Assembly: GCA_044892525.1 (NCBI GenBank)
Contig: CM097887.1
Span: 11,222,001-11,286,000, forward strand
From: Schmidtea polychroa
Taxonomy: Eukaryota
Length of the DNA: 64,000 nucleotides
Direction of reading: 5' to 3'
In this document: piece by piece, positions 1 through 51,876 of the stretch
Layout of the letters: each line of letters opens with the position of its first letter
How positions within the stretch are numbered: the first letter of the stretch is position 1
The notes under the pieces: generated by a model
What the model saw: only the letters and a program-made list of their open reading frames with translations
What the model was told of the DNA's origin: nothing
The model's database searches: none
Made by a program: the position numbers and the translations under genes

Positions 1-2489
1 GCTTTTGAAGATCTGTTTGCTGTATTTAATGATATTATTTGTTGCTAAAGACCTTTCGATTTGATTCTCCACTGCTATCTATATGAATACTAAAAAATTG
101 TATTTTCATGCAAGAATTCCAGGCTCTTGAGGATCTGTTTGCTGTATTTAATGATATCATTTGTTGCTAAAGACGTTTCGATTTGATTCTCCACTGCTAT
201 CTATATGAATACTAAAAAATCGTATTTTCATGCCAGAATTCCAGGCTTTTGAAGATCTGTTTGCTGTATTTAATGATATTATTTGTTGCTAAAGACCTTT
301 CGATTTGATTCTCCACTGCTATCTATATGAATACTAAAAAATTGTATTTTCATGCAAGAATTCCAGGCTCTTGAGGATCTGTTTGCTGTATTTAATGATA
401 TCATTTGTTGCTAAAGACGTTTCGATTTGATTCTCCACTGCTATCTATATGAATACTAAAAAATTGTATTTTCATGCCAGAATTCCAGGCTCTTGAGAAT
501 CTGTTTGCTGTATTTAATGATATTATTTGTTGCTAAAGACCTTTGATTCTCCACTGCTATCTAAATGAATACTAAAAAATTGTATTTTCATGCAAGAATC
601 CAGGCTCTTGAGGATCTGTTTGCTGTATTTAATGATATCATTTGTTGCTAAAGACCTTTCGATTTGATTCTCCAAAAGAAGGGGGATTTAGGGGTAATAT
701 TTATTATGAACTCTCAACTTCACAAGCTATATTAAATTGATGTAAAATTAGTAAGTGGCAATAGCACTTGACTGTACTGTGCTTTATATTTAATGAAAAA
801 TTAGCAGCAAATGTATTGATGGAACCTTCAATTTCACAGATCTTGAAGTTTTACTTAGTTCAACAAATGAAGCACCCTATACTGCGTCAGGTTATATTTG
901 GTCTGTTGCTGCCACTGCTATCTATATGAATACTAAAAAATTGTATTTTCATGCAAGAATTCCAGGCTCTTGAGGATCTGCTTGCTGTATTTAATGATAT
1001 CATTTGTTGCTAAAGACGTTTCGATTTGATTCTCCACTGCTATCTATATGAATACTAAAAAATTGTATTTTCATTCAAGAATTCCAGGCTCTTGAGGATC
1101 TGTTTGCTGTATTTAATGATATCATTTGTTGCTAAAGACCTTTCGATTTGATTCTCCAAAAAACCTTAGAAGGGGAATAATAATTCTAGCAGTGATTTAG
1201 GGGTAATATTTATTATGAACTCTCAACTTCACAAGCTATATTTATTGGATAATGTAAAATTAGTGAGGGGCAATAGCACTTGACTGTACTGTGCGTTCTA
1301 TTTAAAAGAAAATCAGCGGCAAATGTATTGATGGAACCTTCAATTTCACAGATCTTGAAGTTTTACTTAGTTCAACAGATGAAGCACCCTATACTGCGTC
1401 AGGTTATATTTGGTCTGTTGCTGCCACTGCTATCTATATGAATACTAAAAAATCGTATTTTCATGCCAGAATTCCAGGCTTTTGAAGATCTGTTTGCTGT
1501 ATTTAATGATATTATTTGTTGCTAAAGACCTTTCGATTTGATTCTCCACTGCTATCTATATGAATACTAAAAAATTGTATTTTCATGCAAGAATTCCAGG
1601 CTCTTGAGGATCTGTTTGCTGTATTTAATGATATCATTTGTTGCTAAAGACGTTTCGATTTGATTCTCCACTGCTATCTATATGAATACTAAAAAATTGT
1701 ATTTTCATGCAAGAATTCCAAGCTCTTGAGGATCTGTTTGCTGTATTTAATGATATCATTTGTTGCTAAAGACGTTTCGATTTGATTCTCCACTGCTATC
1801 TATATGAATACTAAAAAATTGTATTTTCATGCAAGAATTCCAAGCTCTTGAGGATCTGTTTGCTGTATTTAATGATATCATTTGTTGCTAAAGACGTTTC
1901 GATTTGATTCTCCACTGCTATCTATATGAATACTAAAAAATCGTATTTTCATGCCAGAATTCCAGGCTTTTGAAGATCTGTTTGCTGTATTTAATGATAT
2001 TATTTGTTGCTAAAGACCTTTCGATTTGATTCTCCACTGCTATCTATATGAATACTAAAAAATTGTATTTTCATGCAAGAATTCCAGGCTCTTGAGGATC
2101 TGTTTGCTGTATTTAATGATATCATTTGTTGCTAAAGACGTTTCGATTTGATTCTCCACTGCTATCTATATGAATACTAAAAAATTGTATTTTCATGCCA
2201 GAATTCCAGGCTCTTGAGGATCTGTTTGCTGTATTTAATGATATTATTTGTTGCTAAAGACCTTTGATTCTCCACTGCTATCTAAATGAATACTAAAAAA
2301 TTGTATTTTCATGCAAGAATCCAGGCTCTTGAGGATCTGTTTGCTGTATTTAATGATATTATTTGTTGCTAAAGACCTTTCGATTTGATTCTCCAAAAGA
2401 AGGGGGATTTAGGGGTAATATTTATTATGAACTCTCAACTTCACAAGCTATATTAAATTGATGTAAAATTAGTAAGTGGCAATAGCACT
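1..2489. repeat. Complex satellite array, left block (runs off the window start)
   Basis: Tandem ~122-bp A monomer (CTGCTATCTATATGAATAC...GAATTCCAGG...GATTCTCCA; 116- and 121-bp variants). Longer B monomers occur at ~674, ~1158 and ~2396; the last is interrupted by the retrotransposon. Confidence 0.97.
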
Positions 2490-2527
2490 CTTTCTCTTTC
2501 AAAAATTTTTCTCGTGCAAGAATAAAA

Positions 2528-4435
2528 ATGAACATTTATGAAATTATCAAAACCGCCGTTAACCAGTGCTTAGCAGAATTGCTGCTATACAACATTCATA
2601 GCACTGGGCAGAAATCGGAGGATCTAAAGAACTACAATATTGAAGATACCAAAACTCCGGAAACAAATAATTCAACTTATATTGCAAAATCATCTAATTT
2701 TATTTCTAACAGGAATAACGACCAACCTCTGTCTGCTAGAACAGAGCCGTGCAAGCGCCCGGACGAACTCCATGCCAGAGACACTGAGAAGATGACCCAT
2801 AATGCCCCATCATCTAACCAGGATCCCAATCAGAGAACTTCATTGAACCAATGGACCCAAGGAACAAAGCCGAAGATTTTTAATGACAATCATGCCAAGG
2901 ATATTGGAAGAATGACTTCTAATATCCAATCTCTAAGACATGAGGATATAAATACAGCCGAACAGATATTTTCAATCAAAGAGGATGGGAGAATGACCTC
3001 CAATACAGTACAGGCAGACCCGGATGACTGGAAAACCTACTGCCCTGCTAGGAAGATCTATCTGCTATATAATAAAGGTAATTATAGTCAGAATTTGTAT
3101 AATAATAAATTAAATTATAACCTGAATTTAAATGATAATCTAAATAATATCTTAAATAAATTAAATTATAATGTATATAATAATGAAACAAACTGTAATT
3201 TGTATAATAATTTAAATAAATTAAATTTTAATAACTTAAACTTGAAATTAAAAGATAATTTAAATAATAATTTATATCCTACTAACTACTGTAATAATAA
3301 TTCTATATATAATGACCAATTTAATCTTAACTCAAATCTATATAGTAATAAAAATTTAAATAATAATTTATATCCTACTAATTACTATAATAATAATTCT
3401 ATATTTAATGACCAATTTAATTTTAATTCAAATCTATATAGTAATAAAAATCTAAATAATAATTTATATCCTACTAATTACTATAATAATAATTCTATAT
3501 TTAATGACCAATTTAATTTTAATTCAAATATATATCAATATATCTCCCAACATGATAAAAAACACGTAGACAATTTTAATACTTTTTTATCTAATAATAT
3601 TCATGATTTAATTATCTATAATTTAAAGAATGAGATAAATAATGAGAACGTAGTTTATAATTTAAAAAATGATTTATTTAATTTAATTAATAATAATATT
3701 GATGCTATTTCAACAAAGAATTTTTCTTTGTTTAAATATCATCAATATACTCACTCTTTCTCTTTCAAAAATTTTTCTCGTGTTCCTTCGGAACACGATA
3801 ATACACGCAGCTCGCCGGCCTACGGCCGACTCGCTCCTCACAAATCTGTAGCTTTCAGCGAAAATATTATTACTACTGATTATACCTCAGCCTCTTATAA
3901 GAACTCTGACCCAGAATACCTCCATAACATTGGTGAAATCGGAACCAATTTTTTTAGGGAAATTAAAAAACAATTTCTCCATCTTAAATCCTCAAACCCA
4001 CAAATGCTAACCGCCACCTATATCTGTTTCTTCAAGGACCTTAATAGCAATTACCGTAAACTGATAGATATCCTTGAACCATCCAATAGCGACAAACCAC
4101 CTTTTGATCTGAGGCTTATACCCTACCACAATAATAAGTATCTCATTAAAAATTATAATTCCATATTAACAAACCTTAATAATTACCTCTTTAAGGATAT
4201 CCATACCCAATTAAAAAATAACAATAAAAAAGTAAACTCTTTTATTGTTAGAAATTTCTTCTATATACTATATATTAACTACCGACAATTGACCTCAATA
4301 TTATTTGAGAAGGCAACTCTTGCAGATGATGTAGATGCAGAAATCTCACCTACAAATGATAAAAATAATCCTAACTCAAAAGAAATCAACAATATTAATA
4401 CCGAAAATTCTACATCTCTTGCAGGCATTGCATAA
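2528..4435 (+). CDS. Retrotransposon N-terminal ORF segment, Asn-rich low-complexity protein (635 aa), function unknown
   Basis: 635 stop-free codons in very AT-rich DNA. In frame with the two downstream ORFs; ends at TAA 4433-4435. Confidence 0.62.
   Translation: MNIYEIIKTAVNQCLAELLLYNIHSTGQKSEDLKNYNIEDTKTPETNNSTYIAKSSNFISNRNNDQPLSARTEPCKRPDELHARDTEKMTHNAPSSNQDPNQRTSLNQWTQGTKPKIFNDNHAKDIGRMTSNIQSLRHEDINTAEQIFSIKEDGRMTSNTVQADPDDWKTYCPARKIYLLYNKGNYSQNLYNNKLNYNLNLNDNLNNILNKLNYNVYNNETNCNLYNNLNKLNFNNLNLKLKDNLNNNLYPTNYCNNNSIYNDQFNLNSNLYSNKNLNNNLYPTNYYNNNSIFNDQFNFNSNLYSNKNLNNNLYPTNYYNNNSIFNDQFNFNSNIYQYISQHDKKHVDNFNTFLSNNIHDLIIYNLKNEINNENVVYNLKNDLFNLINNNIDAISTKNFSLFKYHQYTHSFSFKNFSRVPSEHDNTRSSPAYGRLAPHKSVAFSENIITTDYTSASYKNSDPEYLHNIGEIGTNFFREIKKQFLHLKSSNPQMLTATYICFFKDLNSNYRKLIDILEPSNSDKPPFDLRLIPYHNNKYLIKNYNSILTNLNNYLFKDIHTQLKNNNKKVNSFIVRNFFYILYINYRQLTSILFEKATLADDVDAEISPTNDKNNPNSKEINNINTENSTSLAGIA
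3257..3537 (+). repeat. 96-bp (32-aa) in-frame tandem repeat, ~3 copies
   Basis: NLNNNLYPTNYYNNNSIFNDQFNFNSNLYSNK repeated with starts near 3257, 3353 and 3449. Confidence 0.93.
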
Positions 4436-4480
4436 CCTGATATTTTACCCACTCTCCCAGCTAAAACTACTATCATTAAT

Positions 4481-6220
4481 ATGACAAATAATAGATATGC
4501 CTCCCTGATAGACAATATGGACATGGAATATACCACAAATAATTCTACTAAAAAAAATATCTCATTAATTAATAAAGTAACATGTAGTAGACCACATTTT
4601 TCCAAGCCTATTCCGAATCTTTCTTGTCCTAAGGTTATCGGACCCAATGAAAAACTCCTTAAAAAGGTTAGATATATTAAATCTAATACTATGAATAATG
4701 CCTCCTCTTCCCACACCCCAGAAGATACTTCATCATGCCCTAGCTTATCTGAACTATCTTATGACCCTGACAGTGACTCCTCCTGTTCGGAGATCAGTAT
4801 CGACACTTCCTCCTCGAAACACTCCAAAATTAGTATAGATACCTCACATTATAGTTGCTACTTTGACGACACAATAGAATCCCCTATATCAGACCGAGAG
4901 GATGTTAGACCTCCAGAATACCCAAGCGATCTATTCAACTCCGACTGTGATGACGTCGTACTCTCTAGCAGTACCTCTGACCAAAGCTCTATCAATGAAC
5001 CTCCTTCCTCAAACGCCCCTCTCTTAGCCCTTCCTACTAACAACCCCTCACCTCCTCTGCCCGAGAAATCCAACTCTTATAACCTTACCCTACCTACCGA
5101 CTCAATCGAGGAACCCAAAATATATCCCTCAGTTAGACCATCACCGCTAGATGACTCTGCAACCATAACCCCTGTTAGGCAAGAAAAGAAAACCTACAAC
5201 TTTCATTCCTCCGAAAACATTGACCTTGATAGATCATACCCTATTCCTAAAAGGCTTATCCCTGTCGAAAACACTGAACGCAATTCACCAAACCTTATAA
5301 ACCTGAAGGACACTATACCCTCTGCTAAAGAGACACCAAAATACGCAACCACATCCACTCCCATCCACCACAGAAAAGACATAAAATTCCAAAAAAGCCT
5401 AGAGGTTAGAGGTAAAAAGTACACTCTAAAACCCCCCACCTTAGACCTCATAAAGACGAGAAAAACTATAATAAATAAAGATACAATGTCCAAAGACATA
5501 AATGATGAAATATTATACTACTTTGATCTACGGGGCAAATTACAGTGCCGTGGATGCCACCATACTTCTTTTTGTGGACAAATTTCTGCCACTGATATTG
5601 ATAGGATTAGGTCACACGCCCAAGAAATTCACAACATCGCTATAACCTACGACTCTTTGATCGACTGCCACCAATGTAGACCCAAAGGGGAAGGAAGCCG
5701 ATCTATCTTGAACACCATCACCCTTAGAAACCTTTATAACCACATCGACCAATTTGAGCACCACTGTAGTGTAAACAAGGACTTCCTTAAGACTATTACC
5801 CTGAAAATTACTTCCGCAAACCGTTTTTTATGCCACAATCTAAACAAAAACTGCAACAAGTGCTTCCAATCCTTCGACATTGACACACCCTTAGATACAA
5901 TAAATACACATATGATAAAACATCATAAAAATTTAAAATTCGACATCAATCTAAAAATTAATTGCTTCTGTGGAGAGTGGATAAAATATCAGGACTCCAA
6001 AAACCATATTGAGGATCATCACCCCAATAAGGAGACCTCGAATAGCCCCGTGAATAATGACTACAGTAATAACGTAAATATTAATACTAAAAATAACCTT
6101 TTTAATGATATTCTGGATACGCAAGAGGCAATCCTATCACCTCTAAATAATGAAATCATAAATAGGGACATACCTGACAACATCCTATTTACTAATAATA
6201 TTGATAGGGAGGCTGCATGA
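4481..6220 (+). CDS. Retrotransposon ORF segment: Ser/Pro-rich linker plus four C2H2-type zinc fingers
   Basis: CRGC...HAQEIH, CHQC...HIDQFEH, CNKC...HMIKH and CFC...HIEDH at 5546-6022. The frame is open from 4436; it ends at TGA 6218-6220. Confidence 0.8.
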   Translation: MTNNRYASLIDNMDMEYTTNNSTKKNISLINKVTCSRPHFSKPIPNLSCPKVIGPNEKLLKKVRYIKSNTMNNASSSHTPEDTSSCPSLSELSYDPDSDSSCSEISIDTSSSKHSKISIDTSHYSCYFDDTIESPISDREDVRPPEYPSDLFNSDCDDVVLSSSTSDQSSINEPPSSNAPLLALPTNNPSPPLPEKSNSYNLTLPTDSIEEPKIYPSVRPSPLDDSATITPVRQEKKTYNFHSSENIDLDRSYPIPKRLIPVENTERNSPNLINLKDTIPSAKETPKYATTSTPIHHRKDIKFQKSLEVRGKKYTLKPPTLDLIKTRKTIINKDTMSKDINDEILYYFDLRGKLQCRGCHHTSFCGQISATDIDRIRSHAQEIHNIAITYDSLIDCHQCRPKGEGSRSILNTITLRNLYNHIDQFEHHCSVNKDFLKTITLKITSANRFLCHNLNKNCNKCFQSFDIDTPLDTINTHMIKHHKNLKFDINLKINCFCGEWIKYQDSKNHIEDHHPNKETSNSPVNNDYSNNVNINTKNNLFNDILDTQEAILSPLNNEIINRDIPDNILFTNNIDREAA

Positions 6221-6382
6221 TGGTCACAACACTCTATCAAGGCCTTCATCTTTTCCTTTGCCATCAGACCTACCACCATCTTCGTCGACCCCTATATAGG
6301 TAACGCTCTTATACAACACAACTACAAGACCTTCTTTGAAACCTTTCCTTTCAAAGACTTCTCTGATTGGAACGAGATCATC

Positions 6383-9300
6383 ATGCCAATGTGTCATGCT
6401 AAAGACAATTGGTTCTTCTTCTTCCTAGACAAACGCCGAAAGCTGGCAGTACTTATTGACCCTACAACCGATGAAAGTCCTTCTATCCACCTTTCACTTG
6501 CCAATAGTATCCTCGAAACCATCTTAGACCTACAGAAAATTGTCTCCCCTATCACTATCCATCTTCAATACCCCGAATATCCTAGATGCAGCACTCCTAA
6601 TGAATCAGCCTTCTTTATATGCCACATGATTGAATGCCTCATGAAAAATGATAGGATCACCTCACCTAACATCCAGAATATGATTAATAGGATTAAAATT
6701 GTAATTAAAAAAATACTAAATAACAGAATGGCTAGTGATGATGTGCGAAAATATCGCCCATTTATCAGTAGCCTTATAATTAATCTAAATAATGATACAA
6801 CAGACTGTGAATCAGTCCTTTGCGAAATTAATAAAATTAATGAAAACATTAACCCTAAAAAATACATCAATAAAATTCCTGCAGACATCACCCATAAAGC
6901 GAGGAAAAACGCCAATGAACTACTATTTGTCAAAAGAAATAGGTATAAGTTTAATCCAAAGGAGGAAATAAGCAAAATATTAAATAATGAAACCTGTCTT
7001 CAAAAACCCACTATGAAAAATCTTCTAAAACTCTTTGCAGGAGGCATAACCACCTGCCAAACTTTCTCCATAAACCTTCAATGCTCATATCCTGAAACTT
7101 ACTCCTCCACTCCATTTGATCTTGATGATATTAAATACATCCTATCCCAACTTGCAAACACTGCCCCTGGCCTTGACCTTATTACTCTTGCCAACTGGAA
7201 GAAAATATCGCCGGATCATGAACTAATACTATCGATATGCAACAATATCCAACGGAACTCCATATGCCCACCCTCTTGGAAAACCTTCCGTACTAAACTT
7301 ATCCTCAAAGCTGGGAAAAATGAAATTAGCCATGAAGCCAGCTCATGGAGACCCATATCCATTATGAACACCATCTATCGTATCTTCTCCTCTCTCCTCA
7401 ACAATAGACTCCTGGGGTGGATTAAGGAAGGTAATCTTATCTCTAACAATCAAAAAGCGATCGGTGCTCCTGATGGCTGCGCTGAACACAACTTTATCCT
7501 TCAACTTATCAAAGATGCCTCTAATCGCGATAAATCTGACCTACATATTATTTGGTTAGACATCACTGATGCCTTTGGTTCCTTACCACATGACCTTATC
7601 TGGTACACACTATCTAAAATGGGCCTTCACCCAAACTCCATCCAACTTATTAAAAGCATGTACGACCAAGTTAACACCATCTTCGACTGTGAAGGGGAAA
7701 CCTCGCCTTCTGTTCCGATTCTTAAAGGGGTAAAACAAGGATGCCCCTTATCTATGACTCTCTTCTGTCTCTCAATAGACTTCATTATTAAAAACATCCT
7801 AATCTCTCACCCCTTTATCCTAGGAGAAATGAATATAGGTATCCTCGCATACGCTGACGACATAGTACTTATATCTGACTCTTACCCCTCAATCAACTCT
7901 GCCCTACTTGAAACTATCCGCCTTGCTTCACTAGCCAACCTCAAATTTAAACCCTCTAAATCTGGCTACTTCCATCTTAACCATAACTCAAGCTACCACC
8001 CCATAAAACTTTATAACGAGATCATTCCTAAGGTAGATGACTCAAACTTCTACAGATACCTAGGGGTTGACTTCTCCCTCAAAAAACGACACAATATTGA
8101 TGAAACACTCGAATGTGCTCTCACGGATACTGAAAAAATTCTCAAATCACACCTTCATCCATCCCAGAAAATTAATGCCTTTAAAATCTTTATCCACTCA
8201 CGTCTTATCTTCCCCTTCCGCAACTGTGAAATACTCCACAACATTCTTGAATCCCATAAAAACAACATCATAAAAGATAGGAACCCACAAAAAGGCTTTG
8301 ACAATAAGATCAGAAAACTAATAAAAATAGCTCTCGGAGATCGGTTACTCCAAATAAATAATAACTTTCTCTATGCCTCGATAAAAATGGGTGGAATGGG
8401 TCTCACCTCAGCCATTGATGAATATATAATTCAAGGCATTGTACACCTCTCTCGTGCACTAAACTCTACAGATACATCCTTCCGCAACCTTATCCTCTCA
8501 GAACTTGCACTAGCAAGAGGCCAGGGCAATCTTGAAGCAGCTCTCTACTGGATTAATGGCAATACTTCAAAATCATTCCAGCACCGCTCAATATTTCTAA
8601 AATTTAAAAAATCTGCTGACCTACTCCGTCGGAAATATGGAATTCATGCTAAAATCCTCCTACTAGACAACTCATATCAGCTCGAAATCCGATACAAAGA
8701 CAGGATAAATTACTTCCAAAGTGACAATGTAAACACTATCTCCTCTGAAATTCATTCCATCATTAGCCTCATACACACTGAAAAATGGGCCCTCCTAACG
8801 TACCAAGGCCATATTGCAAAATCAATTTGTAATAGCACCACAGCTGGCTACCTCATAAAAACCGATATTCTGACCGATGCCCAATTCTTCTTCCTTATCA
8901 GAGCACGTAACAACCTTCTAGAACTAAACTTTACGCCCCATAGACTTAAATCCAAAAAATCTATACAATGTAGACAATGTAACTCACACCCTGAAACCCA
9001 AGCGCATATCTTTAACCACTGTCCAGCAAAGATAAACGCGCGTAGAAACAAACACTCCCGGGTCTTAGATGCCGTTAGTGAATTCCTCCTTAACCTCAAC
9101 TTCTACTTAGACATCGAAATAACTCCTCTTGGCATACCCACTCTGCTCAAACCCGACCTCATTATAAGATCCATGAGGAACAACAATAACCACATCCTAG
9201 ATATCAAAGTCCCCTATGAACAGAGAGAAAACTTTAAAAGGGTGACCAATGATAACTATGCAAAATATGCCAACCTGGCTATCCAAATTGAAAAGGCACA

Positions 9301-9487
9301 TAAAGTCAAAACCACCATCTCCGCACTTGTAATTGGCACCCTTGGCTCCTGGGACTCTAACAATGACCAGATACTTAGAAAAATAGGACTCTCTAAATCT
9401 GAAATTAAAGGACTGTCACAGAAAGCCTGCACAGCTGCAGTGGTGAGTAGCTACCACATACTTAGAGAACATACCCTTAAGGATTAA
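6383..9487 (+). CDS. Reverse transcriptase with CCHC knuckle and restriction-like endonuclease; N-terminal Ulp1-like domain (frame open from 6221)
   Basis: RT motifs APGLD, WRPISI, WLDITDAFGSLPH, GVKQGCPLS, YADD (~7850) and YRYLGV. CRQC-x8-H-x4-C at ~8969. RLE motifs HSRV, PDL (9152), DIK (9200), YAKY and GTLGSW. Confidence 0.97.
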   Translation: MPMCHAKDNWFFFFLDKRRKLAVLIDPTTDESPSIHLSLANSILETILDLQKIVSPITIHLQYPEYPRCSTPNESAFFICHMIECLMKNDRITSPNIQNMINRIKIVIKKILNNRMASDDVRKYRPFISSLIINLNNDTTDCESVLCEINKINENINPKKYINKIPADITHKARKNANELLFVKRNRYKFNPKEEISKILNNETCLQKPTMKNLLKLFAGGITTCQTFSINLQCSYPETYSSTPFDLDDIKYILSQLANTAPGLDLITLANWKKISPDHELILSICNNIQRNSICPPSWKTFRTKLILKAGKNEISHEASSWRPISIMNTIYRIFSSLLNNRLLGWIKEGNLISNNQKAIGAPDGCAEHNFILQLIKDASNRDKSDLHIIWLDITDAFGSLPHDLIWYTLSKMGLHPNSIQLIKSMYDQVNTIFDCEGETSPSVPILKGVKQGCPLSMTLFCLSIDFIIKNILISHPFILGEMNIGILAYADDIVLISDSYPSINSALLETIRLASLANLKFKPSKSGYFHLNHNSSYHPIKLYNEIIPKVDDSNFYRYLGVDFSLKKRHNIDETLECALTDTEKILKSHLHPSQKINAFKIFIHSRLIFPFRNCEILHNILESHKNNIIKDRNPQKGFDNKIRKLIKIALGDRLLQINNNFLYASIKMGGMGLTSAIDEYIIQGIVHLSRALNSTDTSFRNLILSELALARGQGNLEAALYWINGNTSKSFQHRSIFLKFKKSADLLRRKYGIHAKILLLDNSYQLEIRYKDRINYFQSDNVNTISSEIHSIISLIHTEKWALLTYQGHIAKSICNSTTAGYLIKTDILTDAQFFFLIRARNNLLELNFTPHRLKSKKSIQCRQCNSHPETQAHIFNHCPAKINARRNKHSRVLDAVSEFLLNLNFYLDIEITPLGIPTLLKPDLIIRSMRNNNNHILDIKVPYEQRENFKRVTNDNYAKYANLAIQIEKAHKVKTTISALVIGTLGSWDSNNDQILRKIGLSKSEIKGLSQKACTAAVVSSYHILREHTLKD

Positions 9488-9736
9488 TACTTTACTATTA
9501 TATATACCTACCTAAACAAAGCATTACCATATTATATATTATACATTATCGTTATACTATAAATAGCTCATAAATAAACTGTCTTGTAAAACTACTAAAC
9601 AATACTATATAACTATATCCACAACTAAAGCAGCCTAACCTCCTTTGGATTAACCTTACAAAACCTATAACTAAATAATTACAAATAACTAACCTACTAT
9701 AGCCAACTAATAAATAAATAACTAACTACCTATTAC

Positions 9737-10087
9737 NNNNNNNNNNNNNNNNNNNNNNNNNNNNNNNNNNNNNNNNNNNNNNNNNNNNNNNNNNNNNNNN
9801 NNNNNNNNNNNNNNNNNNNNNNNNNNNNNNNNNNNNNNNNNNNNNNNNNNNNNNNNNNNNNNNNNNNNNNNNNNNNNNNNNNNNNNNNNNNNNNNNNNNN
9901 NNNNNNNNNNNNNNNNNNNNNNNNNNNNNNNNNNNNNNNNNNNNNNNNNNNNNNNNNNNNNNNNNNNNNNNNNNNNNNNNNNNNNNNNNNNNNNNNNNNN
10001 NNNNNNNNNNNNNNNNNNNNNNNNNNNNNNNNNNNNNNNNNNNNNNNNNNNNNNNNNNNNNNNNNNNNNNNNNNNNNNNNNNNNNNN
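9737..10087. other. Assembly gap (N run)
   Basis: 351 N. Confidence 1.
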
Positions 10088-10536
10088 ATTACTATATATA
10101 TCATTATTTATCACTACGGTACTAATTGTAATTGTCAATCACCGAATGGGTTAATGTAGGAACCCTTGTAGGGGTTCTGCCTATTTGGTGGTCTTTTTAG
10201 TTGTCCATATCAATATTATAATCATTATTACTATACTATGATCTACTATTATTGCTACTATTATTACTATTATTCCAATATTACTATTATTACCCCAACC
10301 TCCACCACCTCCTTTTAATGTATACTATAATAAGTAGCTATTATCGCTATAAACCTCGCAAGGGAGCCTTCCTGCTCCAACATTTTACATTTTAGTAACC
10401 CAATCACAACTGAATCACTCCTATGATCAAATTCCGGAACACACTAATATCCCCACTGATCCTATGCTCACTGCAAATGGCCGACATCCACAAATATCTA
10501 CCACATCATTGAACAACCTGCGACCAAACCTCGGAA

Positions 10537-10750
10537 CCTATGACCTCAACAGATACCCGATCTCTCCCACCACAAAGAAGATTTGCCATATAATATAAAA
10601 AGATCCTGAGAATCTCTTCGCACTCCGGTCCAACTACTACATCCTACAATGATCTCAACTACTACCTGATCTCTCCAACCACAATAGAAGATTTGCGATA
10701 AATGAAAGTCCTGAGAATCTCACCACAGTCCGGTCCAATTACTCCACTCT
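10537..10750 (+). repeat. ~109-bp diverged tandem duplication in the retroelement 3' region
   Basis: Two copies of TGA(C/T)CTCAAC...GATCTCTCC...AGAAGATTTGC...CCTGAGAATCTC...CCGGTCCAA. Confidence 0.8.
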
Positions 10751-11063
10751 ATTACAAACCCGCTATCATCACCTGAGACCTGCTACAGAATATCTATATC
10801 TATATCTATATATGTACACCAAAGCATAACCTTATTTACAATCAGTTTATCTCTACTACAACCTAAATTTCAAGGACATATAGATCAAGGACTTTAGATT
10901 TCAAAACATATCCACCTGAAACCACATTTGTGAATGATGCGGGCATCCATATGCCGACATCCCAAGAATATTGAAATAAAAGCTACAGAACCCAAAGGAT
11001 GAGAATCAATCCCTCTTTAGGCCAAGTGGCCAGCTATCTACATTTGAATAAAATAAAATTTGA

Positions 11064-11089
11064 TTTTTTTTTTTTTTTTTTTTTTTTTT
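11064..11089 (+). repeat. (T)26 tract at the retroelement/satellite junction
   Basis: Read directly; preceded by AATAAAATAAAATTTGA. Confidence 0.95.
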
Positions 11090-14000
11090 GCTTTATATTT
11101 AATGAAAAATTAGCAGCAAATGTATTGATGGAACCTTCAATTTCACAGATCTTGAAGTTTTACTTAGTTCAACAAATGAAGCACCCTATACTGCGTCAGG
11201 TTATATTTGGTCTGTTGCTGCCACTGCTATCTATATGAATACTAAAAAATCGTATTTTCATGCCAGAATTCCAGGCTTTTGAAGATCTGTTTGCTGTATT
11301 TAATGATATTATTTGTTGCTAAAGACCTTTCGATTTGATTCTCCACTGCTATCTATATGAATACTAAAAAATTGTATTTTCATGCAAGAATTCCAGGCTC
11401 TTGAGGATCTGTTTGCTGTATTTAATGATATCATTTGTTGCTAAAGACGTTTCGATTTGATTCTCCACTGCTATCTATATGAATACTAAAAAATTGTATT
11501 TTCATTCAAGAATTCCAGGCTCTTGAGGATCTATTTGCTGTATTTAATGATATCATTTGTTGCTAAAGACCTTTCGATTTGATTCTCCAAAAAACCTTAG
11601 AAGGGGAATAATAATTCTAGCAGTGATTTAGGGGTAATATTTATTATGAACTCTCAACTTCACAAGCTATATTTATTGGATAATGTAAAATTAGTGAGGG
11701 GCAATAGCACTTGACTGTACTGTGCGTTCTATTTAAAAGAAAATCAGCGGCAAATGTATTGATGGAACCTTCAATTTCAGAGATCTTGAAGTTTTACTTA
11801 GTTCAACAGGTGAAGCACCCTATACTGCGTCAGGTTATATTTGGTCTGTTGCTGCCACTGCTATCTATATGAATATTAAAAAATTGTATTTTCATGCCAG
11901 AATTCCAGGCTTTTGAGGATCTGTTTGCTGTATTTAATGATATTATTTGTTGCTAAAGACCTTTCGATTTGATTCTCCACTGTTATCTATATGAATACTA
12001 AAAAATTGTATTTTCATGCCAGAATTCCAGGCTCTTGAGGATCTGTTTGCTGTATTTAATGATATTATTTGTTGCTAAAGACCTTTGATTCTCCACTGCT
12101 ATCTAAATGAATACTAAAAAATTGTATTTTCATTCAAGAATTCCAGGCTCTTGAGGATCTGTTTGCTGTATTTAATGATATCATTTGTTGCTAAAGACCT
12201 TTCGATTTGATTCTCCAAAAAACCTTAGAAGGGGAATAATAATTCTAGCAGTGATTTAGGGGTAATATTTATTATGAACTCTCAACTTCACAAGCTATAT
12301 TTATTGGATAATGTAAAATTAGTGAGGGGCAATAGCACTTGACTGTACTGTGCGTTCTATTTAAAAGAAAATCAGCGGCAAATGTATTGATGGAACCTTC
12401 AATTTCACAGATCTTGAAGTTTTACTTAGTTCAACAGATGAAGCACCCTATACTGCGTCAGGTTATATTTGGTCTGTTGCTGCCACTGCTATCTATATGA
12501 ATACTAAAAAATCGTATTTTCATGCCAGAATTCCAGGCTTTTGAAGATCTGTTTGCTGTATTTAATGATATTATTTGTTGCTAAAGACGTTTCGATTTGA
12601 TTCTCCACTGCTATCTATATGAATACTAAAAAATTGTATTTTCATGCCAGAATTCCAGGCTCTTGAGAATCTGTTTGCTGTATTTAATGATATTATTTGT
12701 TGCTAAAGACCTTTGATTCTCCACTGCTATCTATATGAATACTAAAAAATTGTATTTTCATGCCAGAATTCCAGGCTCTTGAGAATCTGTTTGCTGTATT
12801 TAATGATATCATTTGTTGCTAAAGACGTTTCGATTTGATTCTCCACTGCTATCTATATGAATACTAAAAAATTGTATTTTCATGCAAGAATCCAGGCTCT
12901 TGAGGATCTGTTTGCTGTATTTAATGATATCATTTGTTGCTAAAGACCTTTGATTCTCCACTGCTATCTATATGAATACTAAAAAATTGTATTTTCATGC
13001 AAGAATTCCAGGCTCTTGAGGATCTGTTTACTGTATATAATGATATCATTTGTTGCTAAAGACCTTTCGATTTGATTCTTCACTGCTATCTATATGAATA
13101 CTAAAAAATCGTATTTTCATGCCAGAATTCCAGGCTTTTGAAGATCTGTTTGCTGTATTTAATGATATTATTTGTTGCTAAAGACCTTTGATTCTCCACT
13201 GCTATCTAAATGAATACTAAAAAATTGTATTTTCATGCAAGAAACCAGGCTCTTGAGGATCTATTTGCTGTATTTAATGATATCATTTGTTGCTAAAGAC
13301 CTTTCGATTTGATTCTCCAAAAGAAGGGGGATTTAGGGGTAATATTTATTATGAACTCTCAACTTCACAAGCTATATTAAATTGATGTAAAATTAGTAAG
13401 TGGCAATAGCACTTGACTGTACTGTGCTTTATATTTAATGAAAAATTAGCAGCAAATGTATTGATGGAACCTTCAATTTCACAGATCTTGAAGTTTTACT
13501 TATTTCAACAAATGAAGCACCCTATACTGCGTCAGGTTATATTTGGTCTGTTGCTGCCACTGCTATCTATATGAATACTAAAAAATTGTATTTTCATGCA
13601 AGAATTCCAGGCTCTTGAGGATCTGCTTGCTGTATTTAATGATATCATTTGTTGCTAAAGACCTTTGATTCTCCACTGCTATCTATATGAATACTAAAAA
13701 ATTGTATTTTCATGCAAGAATTCCAGGCTCTTGAGGATCTGCTTGCATTATATAATGATATCATTTGTTGCTAAAGACCTTTCGATTTGATTCTTCACTG
13801 CTATCTATATGAATACTAAAAAATTGTATTTTCATGCAAGAATTCCAGGCTCTTGAGGATCTGTTTGCTGTATTTAATGATATCATTTGTTGCTAAAGAC
13901 CTTTCGATTTGATTCTCCACTGCTATCTATATGAATACTAAAAAATTGTATTTTCATTCAAGAATTCCAGGCTCTTGAGGATCTGTTTGCTGTATTTAAT

Positions 14001-17000
14001 GATATCATTTGTTGCTAAAGACCTTTCGATTTGATTCTCCAAAAAACCTTAGAAGGGGAATAATAATTCTAGCAGTGATTTAGGGGTAATATTTATTATG
14101 AACTCTCAACTTCACAAGCTATATTTATTGGATAATGTAAAATTAGTGAGGGGCAATAGCACTTGACTGTACTGTGCGTTCTATTTAAAAGAAAATCAGC
14201 GGCAAATGTATTGATGGAACCTTCAATTTCACAGATCTTGAAGTTTTACTTAGTTCAACAGATGAAGCACCCTATACTGCGTCAGGTTATATTTGGTCTG
14301 TTGCTGCCACTGCTATCTATATGAATACTAAAAAATCGTATTTTCATGCCAGAATTCCAGGCTTTTGAAGATCTGTTTGCTGTATTTAATGATATTATTT
14401 GTTGCTAAAGACCTTTCGATTTGATTCTCCACTGCTATCTATATGAATACTAAAAAATTGTATTTTCATGCAAGAATTCCAGGCTCTTGAGAATCTGTTT
14501 GCTGTATTTAATGATATCATTTGTTGCTAAAGACCTTTCGATTTGATTCTCCACTGCTATCTATATGAATACTAAAAAATTGTATTTTCATGCAAGAATT
14601 CCAAGCTCTTGAGGATCTGTTTGCTGTATATAATGATATCATTTGTTGCTAAAGACCTTTCGATTTGATTCTTCACTGCTATCTATATGAATACTAAAAA
14701 ATCGTATTTTCATGCCAGAATCCCAGGCTTTTGAAGATCTGTTTGCTGTATTTAATGATATTATTTGTTGCTAAAGACCTTTGATTCTCCACTGCTATCT
14801 AAATGAATACTAAAAAATTGTATTTTCATGCAAGAATCCAGGCTCTTGAGGATCTATTTGCTGTATTTAATGATATCATTTGTTGCTAAAGACCTTTCGA
14901 TTTGAATCTCCAAAAGAAGGGGGATTTAGGGGTAATATTTATTATGAACTCTCAACTTCACAAGCTATATTAAATTGATGTAAAATTAGTAAGTGGCAAT
15001 AGCACTTGACTGTACTGTGCTTTATATTTAATGAAAAATTAGCAGCAAATGTATTGATGGAACCTTCAATTTCACAGATCTTGAAGTTTTACTTAGTTCA
15101 ACAAATGAAGCACCCTATACTGCGTCAGGTTATATTTGGTCTGTTGCTGCCACTGCTATCTATATGAATACTAAAAAATTGTATTTTCATGCAAGAATTC
15201 CAGGCTCTTGAGGATCTGCTTGCTGTATTTAATGATATCATTTGTTGCTAAAGACCTTTGATTCTCCACTGCTATCTATATGAATACTAAAAAATTGTAT
15301 TTTCATGCAAGAATTCCAGGCTCTTGAGGATCTGCTTGCTGTATATAATGATATCATTTGTTGCTAAAGACCTTTCGATTTGATTCTCCACTGCTATCTA
15401 TATGAATACTAAAAAATTGTATTTTCATGCAAGAATTCCAGGCTCTTGAGAATCTGTTTGCTGTATTTAATGATATCATTTGTTGCTAAAGACCTTTCGA
15501 TTTGATTCTCCACTGCTATCTATATGAATACTAAAAAATTGTATTTTCATGCAAGAATTCCAAGCTCTTGAGGATCTGTTTGCTGTATATAATGATATCA
15601 TTTGTTGCTAAAGACCTTTCGATTTGATTCTTCACTGCTATCTATATGAATACTAAAAAATCGTATTTTCATGCCAGAATTCCAGGCTTTTGAAGATCTG
15701 TTTGCTGTATTTAATGATATTATTTGTTGCTAAAGACCTTTGATTCTCCACTGCTATCTAAATGAATACTAAAAAATTGTATTTTCATGCAAGAATCCAG
15801 GCTCTTGAGGATCTATTTGCTGTATTTAATGATATCATTTGTTGCTAAAGACCTTTCGATTTGATTCTCCAAAAGAAGGGGGATTTAGGGGTAATATTTA
15901 TTATGAACTCTCAACTTCACAAGCTATATTAAATTGATGTAAAATTAGTAAGTGGCAATAGCACTTGACTGTACTGTGCTTTATATTTAATGAAAAATTA
16001 GCAGCAAATGTATTGATGGAACCTTCAATTTCACAGATCTTGAAGTTTTACTTAGTTCAATTTAAAAGAAAATCAGCGGCAAATGTATTGATGGAACCTT
16101 CAATTTCACAGATCTTGAAGTTTTACTTAGTTCAACAGATGAAGCACCCTATACTGCGTCAGGTTATATTTGGTCTGTTGCTGCCACTGCTATCTATATG
16201 AATACTAAAAAATCGTATTTTCATGCCAGAATTCCAGGCTTTTGAAGATCTGTTTGCTGTATTTAATGATATTATTTGTTGCTAAAGACCTTTCGATTTG
16301 ATTCTCCACTGCTATCTATATGAATACTAAAAAATTGTATTTTCATGCAAGAATTCCAGGCTCTTGAGGATCTGTTTGCTGTATTTAATGATATCATTTG
16401 TTGCTAAAGACGTTTCGATTTGATTCTCCACTGCTATCTATATGAATACTAAAAAATTGTATTTTCATTCAAGAATTCCAGGCTCTTGAGGATCTATTTG
16501 CTGTATTTAATGATATCATTTGTTGCTAAAGACCTTTCGATTTGATTCTCCAAAAAACCTTAGAAGGGGAATAATAATTCTAGCAGTGATTTAGGGGTAA
16601 TATTTATTATGAACTCTCAACTTCACAAGCTATATTTATTGGATAATGTAAAATTAGTGAGGGGCAATAGCACTTGACTGTACTGTGCGTTCTATTTAAA
16701 AGAAAATCAGCGGCAAATGTATTGATGGAACCTTCAATTTCAGAGATCTTGAAGTTTTACTTAGTTCAACAGGTGAAGCACCCTATACTGCGTCAGGTTA
16801 TATTTGGTCTGTTGCTGCCACTGCTATCTATATGAATATTAAAAAATTGTATTTTCATGCCAGAATTCCAGGCTTTTGAGGATCTGTTTGCTGTATTTAA
16901 TGATATTATTTGTTGCTAAAGACCTTTCGATTTGATTCTCCACTGTTATCTATATGAATACTAAAAAATTGTATTTTCATGCCAGAATTCCAGGCTCTTG

Positions 17001-20000
17001 AGGATCTGTTTGCTGTATTTAATGATATTATTTGTTGCTAAAGACCTTTGATTCTCCACTGCTATCTAAATGAATACTAAAAAATTGTATTTTCATTCAA
17101 GAATTCCAGGCTCTTGAGGATCTGTTTGCTGTATTTAATGATATCATTTGTTGCTAAAGACCTTTCGATTTGATTCTCCAAAAAACCTTAGAAGGGGAAT
17201 AATAATTCTAGCAGTGATTTAGGGGTAATATTTATTATGAACTCTCAACTTCACAAGCTATATTTATTGGATAATGTAAAATTAGTGAGGGGCAATAGCA
17301 CTTGACTGTACTGTGCGTTCTATTTAAAAGAAAATCAGCGGCAAATGTATTGATGGAACCTTCAATTTCACAGATCTTGAAGTTTTACTTAGTTCAACAG
17401 ATGAAGCACCCTATACTGCGTCAGGTTATATTTGGTCTGTTGCTGCCACTGCTATCTATATGAATACTAAAAAATCGTATTTTCATGCCAGAATTCCAGG
17501 CTTTTGAAGATCTGTTTGCTGTATTTAATGATATTATTTGTTGCTAAAGACGTTTCGATTTGATTCTCCACTGCTATCTATATGAATACTAAAAAATTGT
17601 ATTTTCATGCCAGAATTCCAGGCTCTTGAGAATCTGTTTGCTGTATTTAATGATATTATTTGTTGCTAAAGACCTTTGATTCTCCACTGCTATCTATATG
17701 AATACTAAAAAATTGTATTTTCATGCCAGAATTCCAGGCTCTTGAGAATCTGTTTGCTGTATTTAATGATATTATTTGTTGCTAAAGACGTTTCGATTTG
17801 ATTCTCCACTGCTATCTATATGAATACTAAAAAATTGTATTTTCATGCAAGAATCCAGGCTCTTGAGGATCTGTTTGCTGTATTTAATGATATCATTTGT
17901 TGCTAAAGACGTTTCGATTTGATTCTCCACTGCTATCTATATGAATACTAAAAAATTGTATTTTCATGCAAGAATCCAGGCTCTTGAGGATCTGTTTGCT
18001 GTATTTAATGATATCATTTGTTGCTAAAGACCTTTGATTCTCCACTGCTATCTATATGAATACTAAAAAATTGTATTTTCATGCAAGAATTCCAGGCTCT
18101 TGAGGATCTGCTTACTGTATATAATGATATCATTTGTTGCTAAAGACCTTTCGATTTGATTCTTCACTGCTATCTATATGAATACTAAAAAATCGTATTT
18201 TCATGCCAGAATTCCAGGCTTTTGAAGATCTGTTTGCTGTATTTAATGATATTATTTGTTGCTAAAGACCTTTGATTCTCCACTGCTATCTAAATGAATA
18301 CTAAAAAATTGTATTTTCATGCAAGAAACCAGGCTCTTGAGGATCTATTTGCTGTATTTAATGATATCATTTGTTGCTAAAGACCTTTCGATTTGATTCT
18401 CCAAAAGAAGGGGGATTTAGGGGTAATATTTATTATGAACTCTCAACTTCACAAGCTATATTAAATTGATGTAAAATTAGTAAGTGGCAATAGCACTTGA
18501 CTGTACTGTGCTTTATATTTAATGAAAAATTAGCAGCAAATGTATTGATGGAACCTTCAATTTCACAGATCTTGAAGTTTTACTTAGTTCAACAAATGAA
18601 GCACCCTATACTGCGTCAGGTTATATTTGGTCTGTTGCTGCCACTGCTATCTATATGAATACTAAAAAATTGTATTTTCATGCAAGAATTCCAGGCTCTT
18701 GAGGATCTGCTTGCTGTATTTAATGATATCATTTGTTGCTAAAGACCTTTGATTCTCCACTGCTATCTATATGAATACTAAAAAATTGTATTTTCATGCA
18801 AGAATTCCAGGCTCTTGAGGATCTGCTTGCTGTATATAATGATATCATTTGTTGCTAAAGACCTTTCGATTTGATTCTTCACTGCTATCTATATGAATAC
18901 TAAAAAATTGTATTTTCATGCAAGAATTCCAGGCTCTTGAGGATCTGTTTGCTGTATTTAATGATATCATTTGTTGCTAAAGACCTTTCGATTTGATTCT
19001 CCACTGCTATCTATATGAATACTAAAAAATTGTATTTTCATTCAAGAATTCCAGGCTCTTGAGGATCTGTTTGCTGTATTTAATGATATCATTTGTTGCT
19101 AAAGACCTTTCGATTTGATTCTCCAAAAAACCTTAGAAGGGGAATAATAATTCTAGCAGTGATTTAGGGGTAATATTTATTATGAACTCTCAACTTCACA
19201 AGCTATATTTATTGGATAATGTAAAATTAGTGAGGGGCAATAGCACTTGACTGTACTGTGCGTTCTATTTAAAAGAAAATCAGCGGCAAATGTATTGATG
19301 GAACCTTCAATTTCACAGATCTTGAAGTTTTACTTAGTTCAACAGATGAAGCACCCTATACTGCGTCAGGTTATATTTGGTCTGTTGCTGCCACTGCTAT
19401 CTATATGAATACTAAAAAATCGTATTTTCATGCCAGAATTCCAGGCTTTTGAAGATCTGTTTGCTGTATTTAATGATATTATTTGTTGCTAAAGACCTTT
19501 CGATTTGATTCTCCACTGCTATCTATATGAATACTAAAAAATTGTATTTTCATGCAAGAATTCCAGGCTCTTGAGAATCTGTTTGCTGTATTTAATGATA
19601 TCATTTGTTGCTAAAGACCTTTCGATTTGATTCTCCACTGCTATCTATATGAATACTAAAAAATTGTATTTTCATGCAAGAATTCCAAGCTCTTGAGGAT
19701 CTGTTTGCTGTATATAATGATATCATTTGTTGCTAAAGACCTTTCGATTTGATTCTTCACTGCTATCTATATGAATACTAAAAAATCGTATTTTCATGCC
19801 AGAATCCCAGGCTTTTGAAGATCTGTTTGCTGTATTTAATGATATTATTTGTTGCTAAAGACCTTTGATTCTCCACTGCTATCTAAATGAATACTAAAAA
19901 ATTGTATTTTCATGCAAGAATCCAGGCTCTTGAGGATCTATTTGCTGTATTTAATGATATCATTTGTTGCTAAAGACCTTTCGATTTGAATCTCCAAAAG

Positions 20001-46341: not shown

Positions 46342-46542
46342 NNNNNNNNNNNNNNNNNNNNNNNNNNNNNNNNNNNNNNNNNNNNNNNNNNNNNNNNNNN
46401 NNNNNNNNNNNNNNNNNNNNNNNNNNNNNNNNNNNNNNNNNNNNNNNNNNNNNNNNNNNNNNNNNNNNNNNNNNNNNNNNNNNNNNNNNNNNNNNNNNNN
46501 NNNNNNNNNNNNNNNNNNNNNNNNNNNNNNNNNNNNNNNNNN
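46342..46542. other. Assembly gap (N run)
   Basis: 201 N. Confidence 1.
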
Positions 46543-51473: not shown

Positions 51474-51876
51474 NNNNNNNNNNNNNNNNNNNNNNNNNNN
51501 NNNNNNNNNNNNNNNNNNNNNNNNNNNNNNNNNNNNNNNNNNNNNNNNNNNNNNNNNNNNNNNNNNNNNNNNNNNNNNNNNNNNNNNNNNNNNNNNNNNN
51601 NNNNNNNNNNNNNNNNNNNNNNNNNNNNNNNNNNNNNNNNNNNNNNNNNNNNNNNNNNNNNNNNNNNNNNNNNNNNNNNNNNNNNNNNNNNNNNNNNNNN
51701 NNNNNNNNNNNNNNNNNNNNNNNNNNNNNNNNNNNNNNNNNNNNNNNNNNNNNNNNNNNNNNNNNNNNNNNNNNNNNNNNNNNNNNNNNNNNNNNNNNNN
51801 NNNNNNNNNNNNNNNNNNNNNNNNNNNNNNNNNNNNNNNNNNNNNNNNNNNNNNNNNNNNNNNNNNNNNNNNNNNN
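51474..51876. other. Assembly gap (N run)
   Basis: 403 N. Confidence 1.

What the first reader, a model, noticed from the sequence alone, without database searches (positions are those of the whole stretch)
2478..11100. RLE retrotransposon inserted into a complex satellite: candidate new target specificity
Established knowledge: RLE-clade elements are usually sequence-specific for multicopy targets (R2 in 28S rDNA, NeSL in SL1, Utopia in U2 snRNA, Dong in microsatellites). Here the site is GCAATAGCACT|TGACTGTACTG|TGCTTT in the B unit, and none of those targets is visible. There is no TSD; 11 bp are deleted (up to 15 given the CACT microhomology). The lost bases nearly coincide with the loop of the inverted repeat AGCAC-N11-GTGCT. 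About 17 intact copies of the site remain in the window. Inference: a satellite-targeting RLE lineage.
Basis: partly seen in the sequence, partly recalled or inferred. Interest (0 to 1): 0.85.

Follow-up and report, generated by a model that had tools for sequence, protein, structure and literature searches.

The report
Retrotransposon inserted in a satellite repeat
A young, apparently intact jumping gene of a known site-specific kind (NeSL/R2-like, with a restriction-like endonuclease) sits in one unit of a complex satellite, but with a single copy to look at, a "new satellite target" is plausible and unproven.

Summary
An ~8.6-kb insertion (2490-11088/9, + strand) interrupts one "B" unit of a satellite. 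Exactly 11 bp of the unit are lost, there is no target-site duplication, and 17 uninterrupted copies of the 28-bp site remain.

The insert is a non-LTR retrotransposon with zinc fingers, a Ulp1-protease-like domain, a reverse transcriptase (RT), a CCHC finger and a restriction-like endonuclease (RLE). In an RT tree it falls in a clade of Ulp1-bearing elements (99/100 bootstraps), apart from proteins named R2. That fits NeSL-type architecture.

Its two internal in-frame stops are not decay. All seven relatives examined have one in-frame TGA between the upstream ORF and the RT ORF.

The assembly gap lies in the 3' UTR and breaks no frame. Continuity across it cannot be proven, though strand composition agrees on both sides.

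The odd poly-T 3' end has a precedent in a planarian NeSL-related family. Two relatives abut the same tRNA-like segment, so the clade does contain site-specific members.

Site specificity for the satellite rests on one copy, because no other copy was retrievable. The inverted repeat at the site is at chance level. A 55-nt antisense 28S-like segment near the 5' end hints at rDNA-targeting ancestry.

Verdict: a new member of a known kind, of moderate interest.

The parts
2395..2489 (+). Left part of the interrupted satellite B unit (B positions 1-95), ending ...GCAATAGCACT
   Evidence: 100% match to the reference B unit; read directly.
2490..11089 (+). The inserted non-LTR retrotransposon, about 8.6 kb counting the estimated 351-N gap. 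The last T is ambiguous between tail and target.
   Evidence: Sense-strand C>G and A>T bias throughout.
2490..2516 (+). 27 extra nt at the 5' junction. Together with the target's CACT (2486-2489) they are 100% identical to 3752-3782 inside the coding region.
   Evidence: Read as a template-switch / microhomology 5' join (inference). An assembly k-mer effect is not excluded.
2528..9487 (+). Coding region: three ORFs in one reading frame, separated by two single in-frame stops (one TAA, one TGA). No frameshift.
   Evidence: The same layout is found in relatives.
2555..2609 (-). 55-nt segment resembling eukaryotic 28S (LSU) rRNA, model positions 2200-2254, antisense to the element
   Evidence: Rfam 30.6 bits, E 1.5e-5 in a 551-nt search. 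Below the family's gathering score of 50.
3092..3536 (+). Asn-rich tandem repeats (96-bp period) inside the first ORF
5546..6022 (+). Four C2H2-like (Cys2-His2) zinc-finger motifs in the second ORF, the presumed DNA-binding region
   Evidence: Motif scan. Weak similarity to the upstream ORF of relative L002 (E 5e-4). No Pfam hit.
6230..6715 (+). Ulp1 (peptidase C48)-like domain. It is homologous to the Pfam-positive domain of relatives, but most catalytic-site positions are not conserved.
   Evidence: Alignment A1. Relatives hit PF02902; the window copy does not.
7322..8068 (+). Reverse transcriptase domain with YADD present
   Evidence: Pfam RVT_1, E 2e-28; YADD found. Best solved-structure matches are R2 proteins, E 1e-50.
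8963..9463 (+). CCHC zinc knuckle plus restriction-like endonuclease (KPD ... D.K)
   Evidence: Aligned to R2 structures 9nl3, 9dou and 9nl2, E 2e-11. Motifs located.
9488..11063 (+). 3' UTR, about 1.6 kb. It holds the assembly gap 9737-10087 and a 109-bp tandem duplication at 10540-10743.
11064..11089 (+). Run of 26 T at the 3' end of the sense strand, preceded by ...AATAAAATTTGA
   Evidence: A planarian NeSL-related family ends the same way (S6 Fig of PMC4640811).
11090..11220 (+). Right part of the interrupted B unit, from B108 (or B107 at 11089)
15955..15982 (+). Example of an intact 28-bp target site, one of 17

Best explanation
A young, full-length or nearly full-length non-LTR retrotransposon of the RLE-bearing, Ulp1-protease-bearing group has inserted into one B unit of a complex satellite. 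The group has NeSL-type architecture, and its nearest described relatives are probably the platyhelminth R5/LIN lineage. The insertion mechanism is target-primed reverse transcription (TPRT).

Inferred steps of the insertion:
1. The endonuclease nicks the bottom strand opposite ...CTG|TGCTTT.
2. cDNA synthesis starts at a U-rich RNA 3' end, or after untemplated A additions, which gives the T-run.
3. The top strand is cut 11 nt upstream, after ...GCACT, so the 11 bp between the two cuts are lost.
4. The 5' end is joined after a short template switch (27 nt copied from inside the first ORF) that lands on a 4-nt CACT microhomology.

Expression (inferred): the protein is encoded as zinc-finger ORF(s), then one in-frame UGA, then protease-like domain, RT, CCHC and RLE. 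This would be expressed by stop-codon read-through, in the manner of a gag-pol fusion. The zinc fingers, the fastest-diverging part, would read the target.

Target specificity: members of this clade are site-specific, so the B-unit site is probably the family's preferred target. This last step is inference from one copy.
For: Identity of the element:
- RVT_1, E 2e-28.
- R2 proteins are the best solved relatives.
- CCHC and PD-D/ExK motifs align with R2 structures.
- No APE domain was found.
- The best homologues carry Peptidase_C48 plus RVT_1.
- The window groups with 11 such proteins in 99 of 100 NJ bootstraps, apart from R2-named proteins.

Insertion anatomy:
- Exact 11-bp loss and no TSD.
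- A deletion is expected when the top-strand cut lies upstream of the bottom-strand cut (PMC4640811).
- 27 nt plus CACT are identical to an internal stretch.

Youth and intactness:
- The T-run is pure and both flanking half-units are 100% identical to the reference B unit.
- YADD, CCHC and the nuclease motifs are present.
- The in-frame stops are shared by relatives. 7 of 7 have one TGA between the upstream ORF and the RT ORF, and 6 of the 8 TGAs, window included, are followed by C. L003 has the same TAA-then-TGA three-ORF layout.

The poly-T end is genuine for this kind of element: an S. mediterranea NeSL-related family ends ...aataaaatttag(t)n.

Site specificity in the clade:
- L002 and L006, whose proteins are 39% identical, abut the same ~36-nt tRNA-like segment plus T-run.
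- This resembles planarian LIN15_SM, which targets tRNA-Arg.
- The R5/LIN lineage is reported to have diversified targets.
- 17 empty sites remain in the array, as in R2-type partial occupancy of a multicopy target.
Against: - Only one copy is available, so a single landing in a satellite carries no statistical weight for sequence specificity. Satellites also retain non-specific insertions.
- Some Utopia and YURE families are only weakly specific.
- The gap prevents proof that the two junctions belong to one insertion.
- The 3' UTR (~1.6 kb) is about four times longer than in relative L002, so a second sequence nested in it cannot be excluded.
- The window's protease-like domain fails Pfam and lacks most catalytic residues.
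- Named NeSL, R5 and LIN reference sequences could not be obtained, so clade assignment rests on architecture and on unnamed relatives.
- The host is unidentified.
- The 28S-like antisense segment could mean the family's real or ancestral target is rDNA.
Confidence: 0.55

Rival explanations
1. The family is non-specific or only weakly specific. This copy landed in the satellite, or survived there, because repeat-rich heterochromatin tolerates insertions. The exact site has no meaning.
For: One copy only. No other copy was retrievable. Weakly specific relatives exist: crocodilian Utopia and YURE. The hairpin at the site is at chance level. No known target RNA gene lies in the B unit.
Against: Most RLE elements are target-specific (abstract of PMC4640811). 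Two clade members share a tRNA-like 3' flank. The 3' junction is clean, the deletion is small and defined, and 17 identical sites lie nearby.
Confidence: 0.3
2. The family's main or ancestral target is another multicopy gene (28S rDNA or a tRNA gene), and the satellite copy is an ectopic insertion.
For: A 55-nt antisense 28S-like segment lies near the 5' end. R5 and LIN9/24/26_SM are 28S-specific and LIN15/25_SM are tRNA-specific. Relatives L002 and L006 sit in tRNA-like sequence.
Against: The 28S-like piece is antisense, internal, about 73% identical to the model consensus, and absent from relatives L001-L003. The B unit shows no significant similarity to it. No rRNA or tRNA lies in the window.
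Confidence: 0.1
3. The 5' and 3' junctions come from two different insertions, or from an element plus an unrelated sequence, brought together by scaffolding across the gap or by a 31-bp repeat.
For: A 351-N gap of estimated length lies between the junctions. The 3' UTR is unusually long. The 31-bp exact repeat at the 5' junction has the size of a common assembly k-mer.
Against: The two junctions map to the same B unit, 11 bp apart. No satellite DNA lies between the gap and the 3' junction. Strand composition is the same on both sides of the gap. If two copies at the same site were merged, that would strengthen site specificity rather than weaken it.
Confidence: 0.12

Closest known systems
NeSL-1 and nematode NeSL families; Utopia-1_TSP
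   Same: N-terminal zinc fingers, a Ulp1-like protease upstream of the RT, and a C-terminal zinc finger plus RLE (PMC4640811). Insertion into multicopy sequence.
   Different: Those target spliced-leader or U2 genes and are described as encoding one protein. Here the coding region is split by conserved in-frame stops, the protease-like domain has lost most catalytic residues, and the target is a non-genic satellite. No sequence comparison with named NeSL was possible.
R5/LIN lineage of platyhelminths (R5, LIN9/15/24/25/26_SM)
   Same: It belongs to the NeSL clade and has diversified targets. A Schmidtea family ends in ...aataaaattt + poly-T like this element. The window's relatives L002 and L006 sit in tRNA-like sequence as LIN15_SM does. 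The genome here is AT-rich (~32% GC).
   Different: The reported targets are 28S, tRNA-Arg and tRNA-Glu, not a satellite. The host of the window is unknown, and membership could not be tested with reference sequences.
YURE (Ciona), NeSL-related
   Same: It is found in a satellite and has RLE-type NeSL-related architecture.
   Different: The YURE satellite is derived from the U2 gene, the ancestral Utopia target, and its specificity is weak. The B unit shows no U2 or other RNA-gene signal.
R2
   Same: R2 proteins are the best solved-structure relatives. RT, CCHC and RLE are shared. The model is the same: TPRT with two staggered cuts, variable 5' junctions and template jumps.
   Different: No Myb domain was found, the element is not in 28S, it is separate from R2-named proteins in the tree, and it has an extra protease-like domain and upstream ORFs.
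Genie 1 of Giardia (from my own knowledge; not verified here)
   Same: As I recall, an RLE-type element reported as site-specific within a tandem repeat, so a satellite-type target has a precedent.
   Different: It is a distant lineage. The paper I opened did not confirm the detail.

Membership tests
RLE-bearing non-LTR retrotransposons (R2/NeSL/R4/HERO/CRE grade) | Reverse transcriptase of non-LTR type | tested here: met
   Pfam RVT_1, E 2e-28. R2 and L1 ORF2 structures matched. YADD present.
RLE-bearing non-LTR retrotransposons (R2/NeSL/R4/HERO/CRE grade) | C-terminal CCHC finger followed by a PD-(D/E)xK restriction-like endonuclease; no APE domain | tested here: met
   Aligned with R2 structures, E 2e-11. 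C-x2-C-x8-H-x4-C, KPD and D.K are present. No APE hit in Pfam.
RLE-bearing non-LTR retrotransposons (R2/NeSL/R4/HERO/CRE grade) | N-terminal zinc fingers | tested here: inconclusive
   Four Cys2-His2 motifs by pattern and a weak match to a relative, but no Pfam support. They lie upstream of an in-frame stop.
NeSL clade (NeSL, Utopia, YURE, R5/LIN) | RT groups with named members in a phylogeny | not testable with these tools
   No named NeSL, Utopia or R5 sequence could be fetched. The tree of unnamed relatives puts the window in a Ulp1-bearing clade (99/100), apart from R2-named proteins.
NeSL clade (NeSL, Utopia, YURE, R5/LIN) | Ulp1-like protease upstream of the RT (NeSL proper and Utopia-1_TSP only) | tested here: inconclusive
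   The domain is homologous to the Pfam-positive domain of relatives, but the window copy fails Pfam and lacks most catalytic-site residues.
NeSL clade (NeSL, Utopia, YURE, R5/LIN) | One protein from one ORF (as described for Utopia) | tested here: not met
   Three same-frame ORFs separated by single stops. The layout is shared with relatives.
R2 clade | Insertion at the R2 site of 28S rDNA; Myb domain | tested here: not met
   No rRNA in the flanks. No Myb hit. Separate clade.
Sequence-specific retrotransposon with the B unit as target | Several independent copies joined to the same target position | tested here: inconclusive
   There is one copy in the window. Searches for more found nothing.
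Sequence-specific retrotransposon with the B unit as target | Multicopy target with unoccupied copies | tested here: met
   17 intact sites against 0 expected.
R5/LIN lineage of platyhelminths | Flatworm host | not testable with these tools
   The host is not identified. The hAT ORF search gave unnamed hits only. AT-richness and the 3'-end likeness are only suggestive.

The most novel reading that the evidence does not exclude
A lineage of Ulp1-bearing NeSL-type retrotransposons, whose relatives home to tRNA genes, has moved to a non-genic complex satellite as its specific target. The whole clade expresses its zinc-finger / protease-RT-endonuclease protein through a conserved in-frame UGA, a gag-pol-like read-through strategy that one literature search did not find described for non-LTR elements. 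The antisense 28S-like segment would be a relic of an rDNA-targeting ancestor.
Probability: 0.35. Interest if true: 0.6.

Novelty: new member of a known kind. Interest (0 to 1): 0.4.

Why it matters
If other copies sit at the same B-unit position, this adds a non-genic complex satellite to the list of targets used by RLE retrotransposons. It would also give a pair of related elements, tRNA-targeting and satellite-targeting, in which to see which protein parts change with the target. The zinc-finger ORF is the obvious candidate. The conserved in-frame UGA in eight elements is a clean, testable case of possible programmed read-through in a non-LTR retrotransposon. If the copy is a one-off, it is an ordinary insertion in heterochromatin.

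Tried and rejected
- Other copies of the element. Searches tried: exact-protein look-up, homologue search (best hit 38% identity), metagenome scans by protein and by the 25-nt target site, a viral-contig scan, and tblastn within the window. All were empty.
- Target as a hidden RNA gene. Rfam at gathering threshold, Rfam by E-value, and ARAGORN found nothing.
- Hairpin at the site: not better than shuffles.
- Structured 3' end: z -0.21.
- HDV-like or other ribozyme at the 5' end: none. The scan instead turned up the 28S-like piece.
- Similarity between the B unit and the element's 5' region: none beyond chance, since 258 of 300 shuffles scored as well.
- Higher-order repeat phase as a test that both flanks belong to one B unit: the array is too variable to decide.
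- Host identification from the hAT ORF, from sample accessions in the literature, and from planarian rRNA probe lists: nothing found.
- Homology of the first two ORFs with those of L003 and L002: only the zinc-finger stretch is weakly similar.
- The tRNA nature of the shared 3' flank of L002 and L006: Rfam gives only 15 bits, so it rests on the T-arm-like sequence, the T-run, and the likeness to strings printed in the paper's S6 Fig.
- Precedent of Genie 1 in a tandem repeat: not confirmed in the paper read.
Full report
**1. What is in the sequence**

The first 24.5 kb of the window is a complex satellite. It consists of arrays of a 122-bp A unit punctuated by B units of about 240-313 bp. The B units contain one or two copies of a 75-bp sub-repeat.

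The satellite is interrupted between 2489 and 11089/90. Against a reference B unit (15871-16183):
- B positions 1-95 match 2395-2489 at 100%.
- B positions 107-190 match 11089-11172 at 100%.
- The 11 bp at B96-106 are therefore absent, and nothing is duplicated.

The count of lost bases has two small ambiguities. The last T of the T-run may be target (11 or 12 bp lost). The CACT at 2486-2489 is shared with the inserted sequence (up to 15 bp lost).

The 28-bp site occurs 17 more times in the window, 10 exact and 7 with one mismatch, against none expected.

The inverted repeat AGCAC-N11-GTGCT is there, but it folds no better than shuffled sequence. I give it no weight.

**2. The gap**

The N stretch at 9737-10087 lies after the end of the coding region, in the 3' UTR. 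The question of reading frame across it therefore does not arise.

Three things argue for one insertion:
- The two junctions fall in the same B unit, 11 bp apart.
- No satellite DNA lies between the gap and the 3' junction.
- The DNA right of the gap has the same strand bias as the element's sense strand (GC skew -0.25 to -0.38). The satellite and the rest of the window are near 0.

Two things argue for caution. The 3' UTR is about 1.6 kb, against roughly 0.4 kb in relative L002. The exact repeat at the 5' junction is 31 bp, which is a common assembler word size.

**3. What the insert is**

The coding region runs from 2528 to 9487 on the + strand, as three ORFs in one frame.
- The first ORF is Asn-rich with internal tandem repeats and has no family match.
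- The second ORF carries four Cys2-His2 motifs.
- The third ORF has a reverse transcriptase (RVT_1, E 2e-28), a CCHC knuckle and a PD-(D/E)xK nuclease. The knuckle and nuclease align with solved R2 proteins (E 2e-11). R2 proteins are also the best solved relatives overall (E 1e-50).
- No APE domain is present.

The best homologues, all unnamed metagenome or read-archive proteins at 31-36% identity, combine Peptidase_C48 (Ulp1) with RVT_1. Aligned with four of them, the window's sequence is homologous across the protease domain but has lost most of its catalytic-site residues. This explains why Pfam does not see the domain in the window copy.

In a neighbour-joining tree of the RT region, the window sits in a clade of 12 such elements in 99 of 100 bootstraps. 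A wider group of 19 has 84 of 100. Both are apart from proteins named R2. The tree is rough: simple distances, and no named NeSL, R5 or HERO references.

According to Kojima and Jurka 2015 (PMC4640811), a Ulp1-like protease upstream of the RT marks the nematode NeSL families and Utopia-1_TSP. The NeSL clade also holds the platyhelminth R5/LIN lineage, whose target specificity "has been diversified".

**4. The in-frame stops are a shared feature, not decay**

The three ORFs are separated by exactly two single in-frame stops, one TAA and one TGA. There is no frameshift.

I fetched the contigs of seven relatives (L001-L007).
- In all seven, the ORF upstream of the RT ORF is in the same frame and is separated from it by one TGA.
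- L003 shows the same three-ORF, TAA-then-TGA layout.
- Six of the eight TGAs, window included, are followed by C.
- In the core clade, homology to the protease domain begins directly after the stop.

Eight of eight in one frame, always with TGA, is far from chance. I therefore count no breaks in this copy: 0 frameshifts, and 2 internal stops that are conserved ORF boundaries. I read the arrangement as a candidate for programmed read-through, giving a zinc-finger / protease-RT-endonuclease fusion (inference). One literature search did not turn up a description of this.

**5. The two junctions**

*3' junction.* The sense strand ends in 26 T, preceded by ...AATAAAATTTGA. A poly-T end is unusual. 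However, the S6 Fig of PMC4640811 prints a family on Schmidtea contigs that ends ...aataaaatttag followed by a T-run. The end is therefore likely genuine for this kind of element.

*5' junction.* The first 27 nt of the insert, together with the target's CACT, are identical to 3752-3782 inside the first ORF. This fits a short template switch followed by a microhomology join, as known for R2-type reverse transcriptases (established knowledge; inference here).

The 11-bp loss fits a top-strand cut upstream of the bottom-strand cut.

**6. Is it satellite-specific?**

This is the core of the finding, and it could not be tested. There is one copy in the window, and no other copy in any collection I could reach.

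Indirect evidence is favourable:
- Relatives L002 and L006 have proteins only 39% identical and unalignable 3' UTRs. Both are nevertheless followed by the same ~36-nt segment with a T-arm-like sequence and a T-run.
- That pattern resembles the tRNA-Arg flanks printed for planarian LIN15_SM.
- The clade therefore contains site-specific members, and a change of target is a known habit of the related lineage.

Against this, weakly specific relatives exist, and satellites retain non-specific insertions. I put the chance of true B-unit specificity at about one half.

**7. An unexpected detail**

On the minus strand, 2555-2609 matches the eukaryotic LSU rRNA model at positions 2200-2254 (30.6 bits; E 1.5e-5 for a 551-nt search). 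The helix is preserved by changes on both sides.
- The score is below the family's gathering score.
- The hit was lost in a larger scan.
- It is absent from L001-L003.
- The segment has no significant similarity to the B unit.

Because R5 and several LIN families are 28S-specific, it may be a relic of an rDNA-targeting ancestor. It also feeds the rival view that the satellite copy is ectopic.

**8. Comparison and verdict**

The element works like R2 or NeSL. It meets the defining features of RLE-type non-LTR retrotransposons. It fits NeSL-type architecture, with two departures: ORFs split by conserved stops, and a protease-like domain that has lost most of its catalytic residues. Clade membership could not be tested against named references. 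It is not an R2.

A satellite target would be new in detail. It would not be new in kind, because microsatellites, U2-derived satellites, tRNA genes, rDNA and spliced-leader genes are all known targets in this group.

Verdict: a new member of a known kind, of moderate interest.

Noticed in passing
window 2555-2609 (minus strand): A 55-nt segment matches the eukaryotic 28S (LSU) rRNA model at positions 2200-2254, antisense, just inside the element's 5' end (30.6 bits, E 1.5e-5 in a 551-nt search). It may be a relic of an rDNA-targeting ancestor.
   Followed up: partly
window 2528-9487; L001-L007: The window and all seven relatives have one in-frame TGA between the upstream ORF and the protease-RT-endonuclease ORF, and 6 of the 8 TGAs are followed by C. 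This is a candidate for conserved programmed read-through in a non-LTR retrotransposon clade.
   Followed up: partly
window ~6230-6715: The Ulp1-protease-like domain of the window's copy has lost most catalytic-site residues that its relatives keep. The RT and endonuclease motifs are intact.
   Followed up: partly
window 2486-2516 and 3752-3782: An exact 31-bp repeat links the 5' junction to the inside of the first ORF. It is either a template-switch signature or an assembly word-size effect.
   Followed up: partly
L002 4630-4670; L006 5440-5480: Two distant relatives (39% protein identity) are followed by the same tRNA-like 3' segment plus T-run, which indicates tRNA-gene targeting in this clade.
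   Followed up: partly
window 11221-21268: The satellite has a higher-order period of about 5.08 kb (B units recur at +4963/+5084 bp) and three B-unit variants. The interrupted unit has one 75-bp sub-repeat where the corresponding units of the period have two.
   Followed up: partly
window 3092-3536: The first ORF contains near-identical 96-bp tandem repeats that encode an Asn-rich low-complexity stretch.
   Followed up: no
window 39162-39662 (+): An ORF with a hAT-family dimerisation domain (E 4e-13), a DNA-transposon remnant. Only two unnamed homologues were found.
   Followed up: partly
window 58108-58946 (+): Two short ORFs, the second with a partial reverse transcriptase domain (E 1e-11). 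It is a fragment of another retroelement, unrelated to the one studied by tblastn.
   Followed up: no
window 46342-46542 and 51474-51876: Two further assembly gaps, in very AT-rich surroundings (GC 0.18-0.21).
   Followed up: no
L006 1683-5129: In relative L006 the RT ORF is followed by a further 155-codon ORF in the same frame. That copy therefore carries one extra in-frame stop compared with its relatives and is probably a decayed copy.
   Followed up: no
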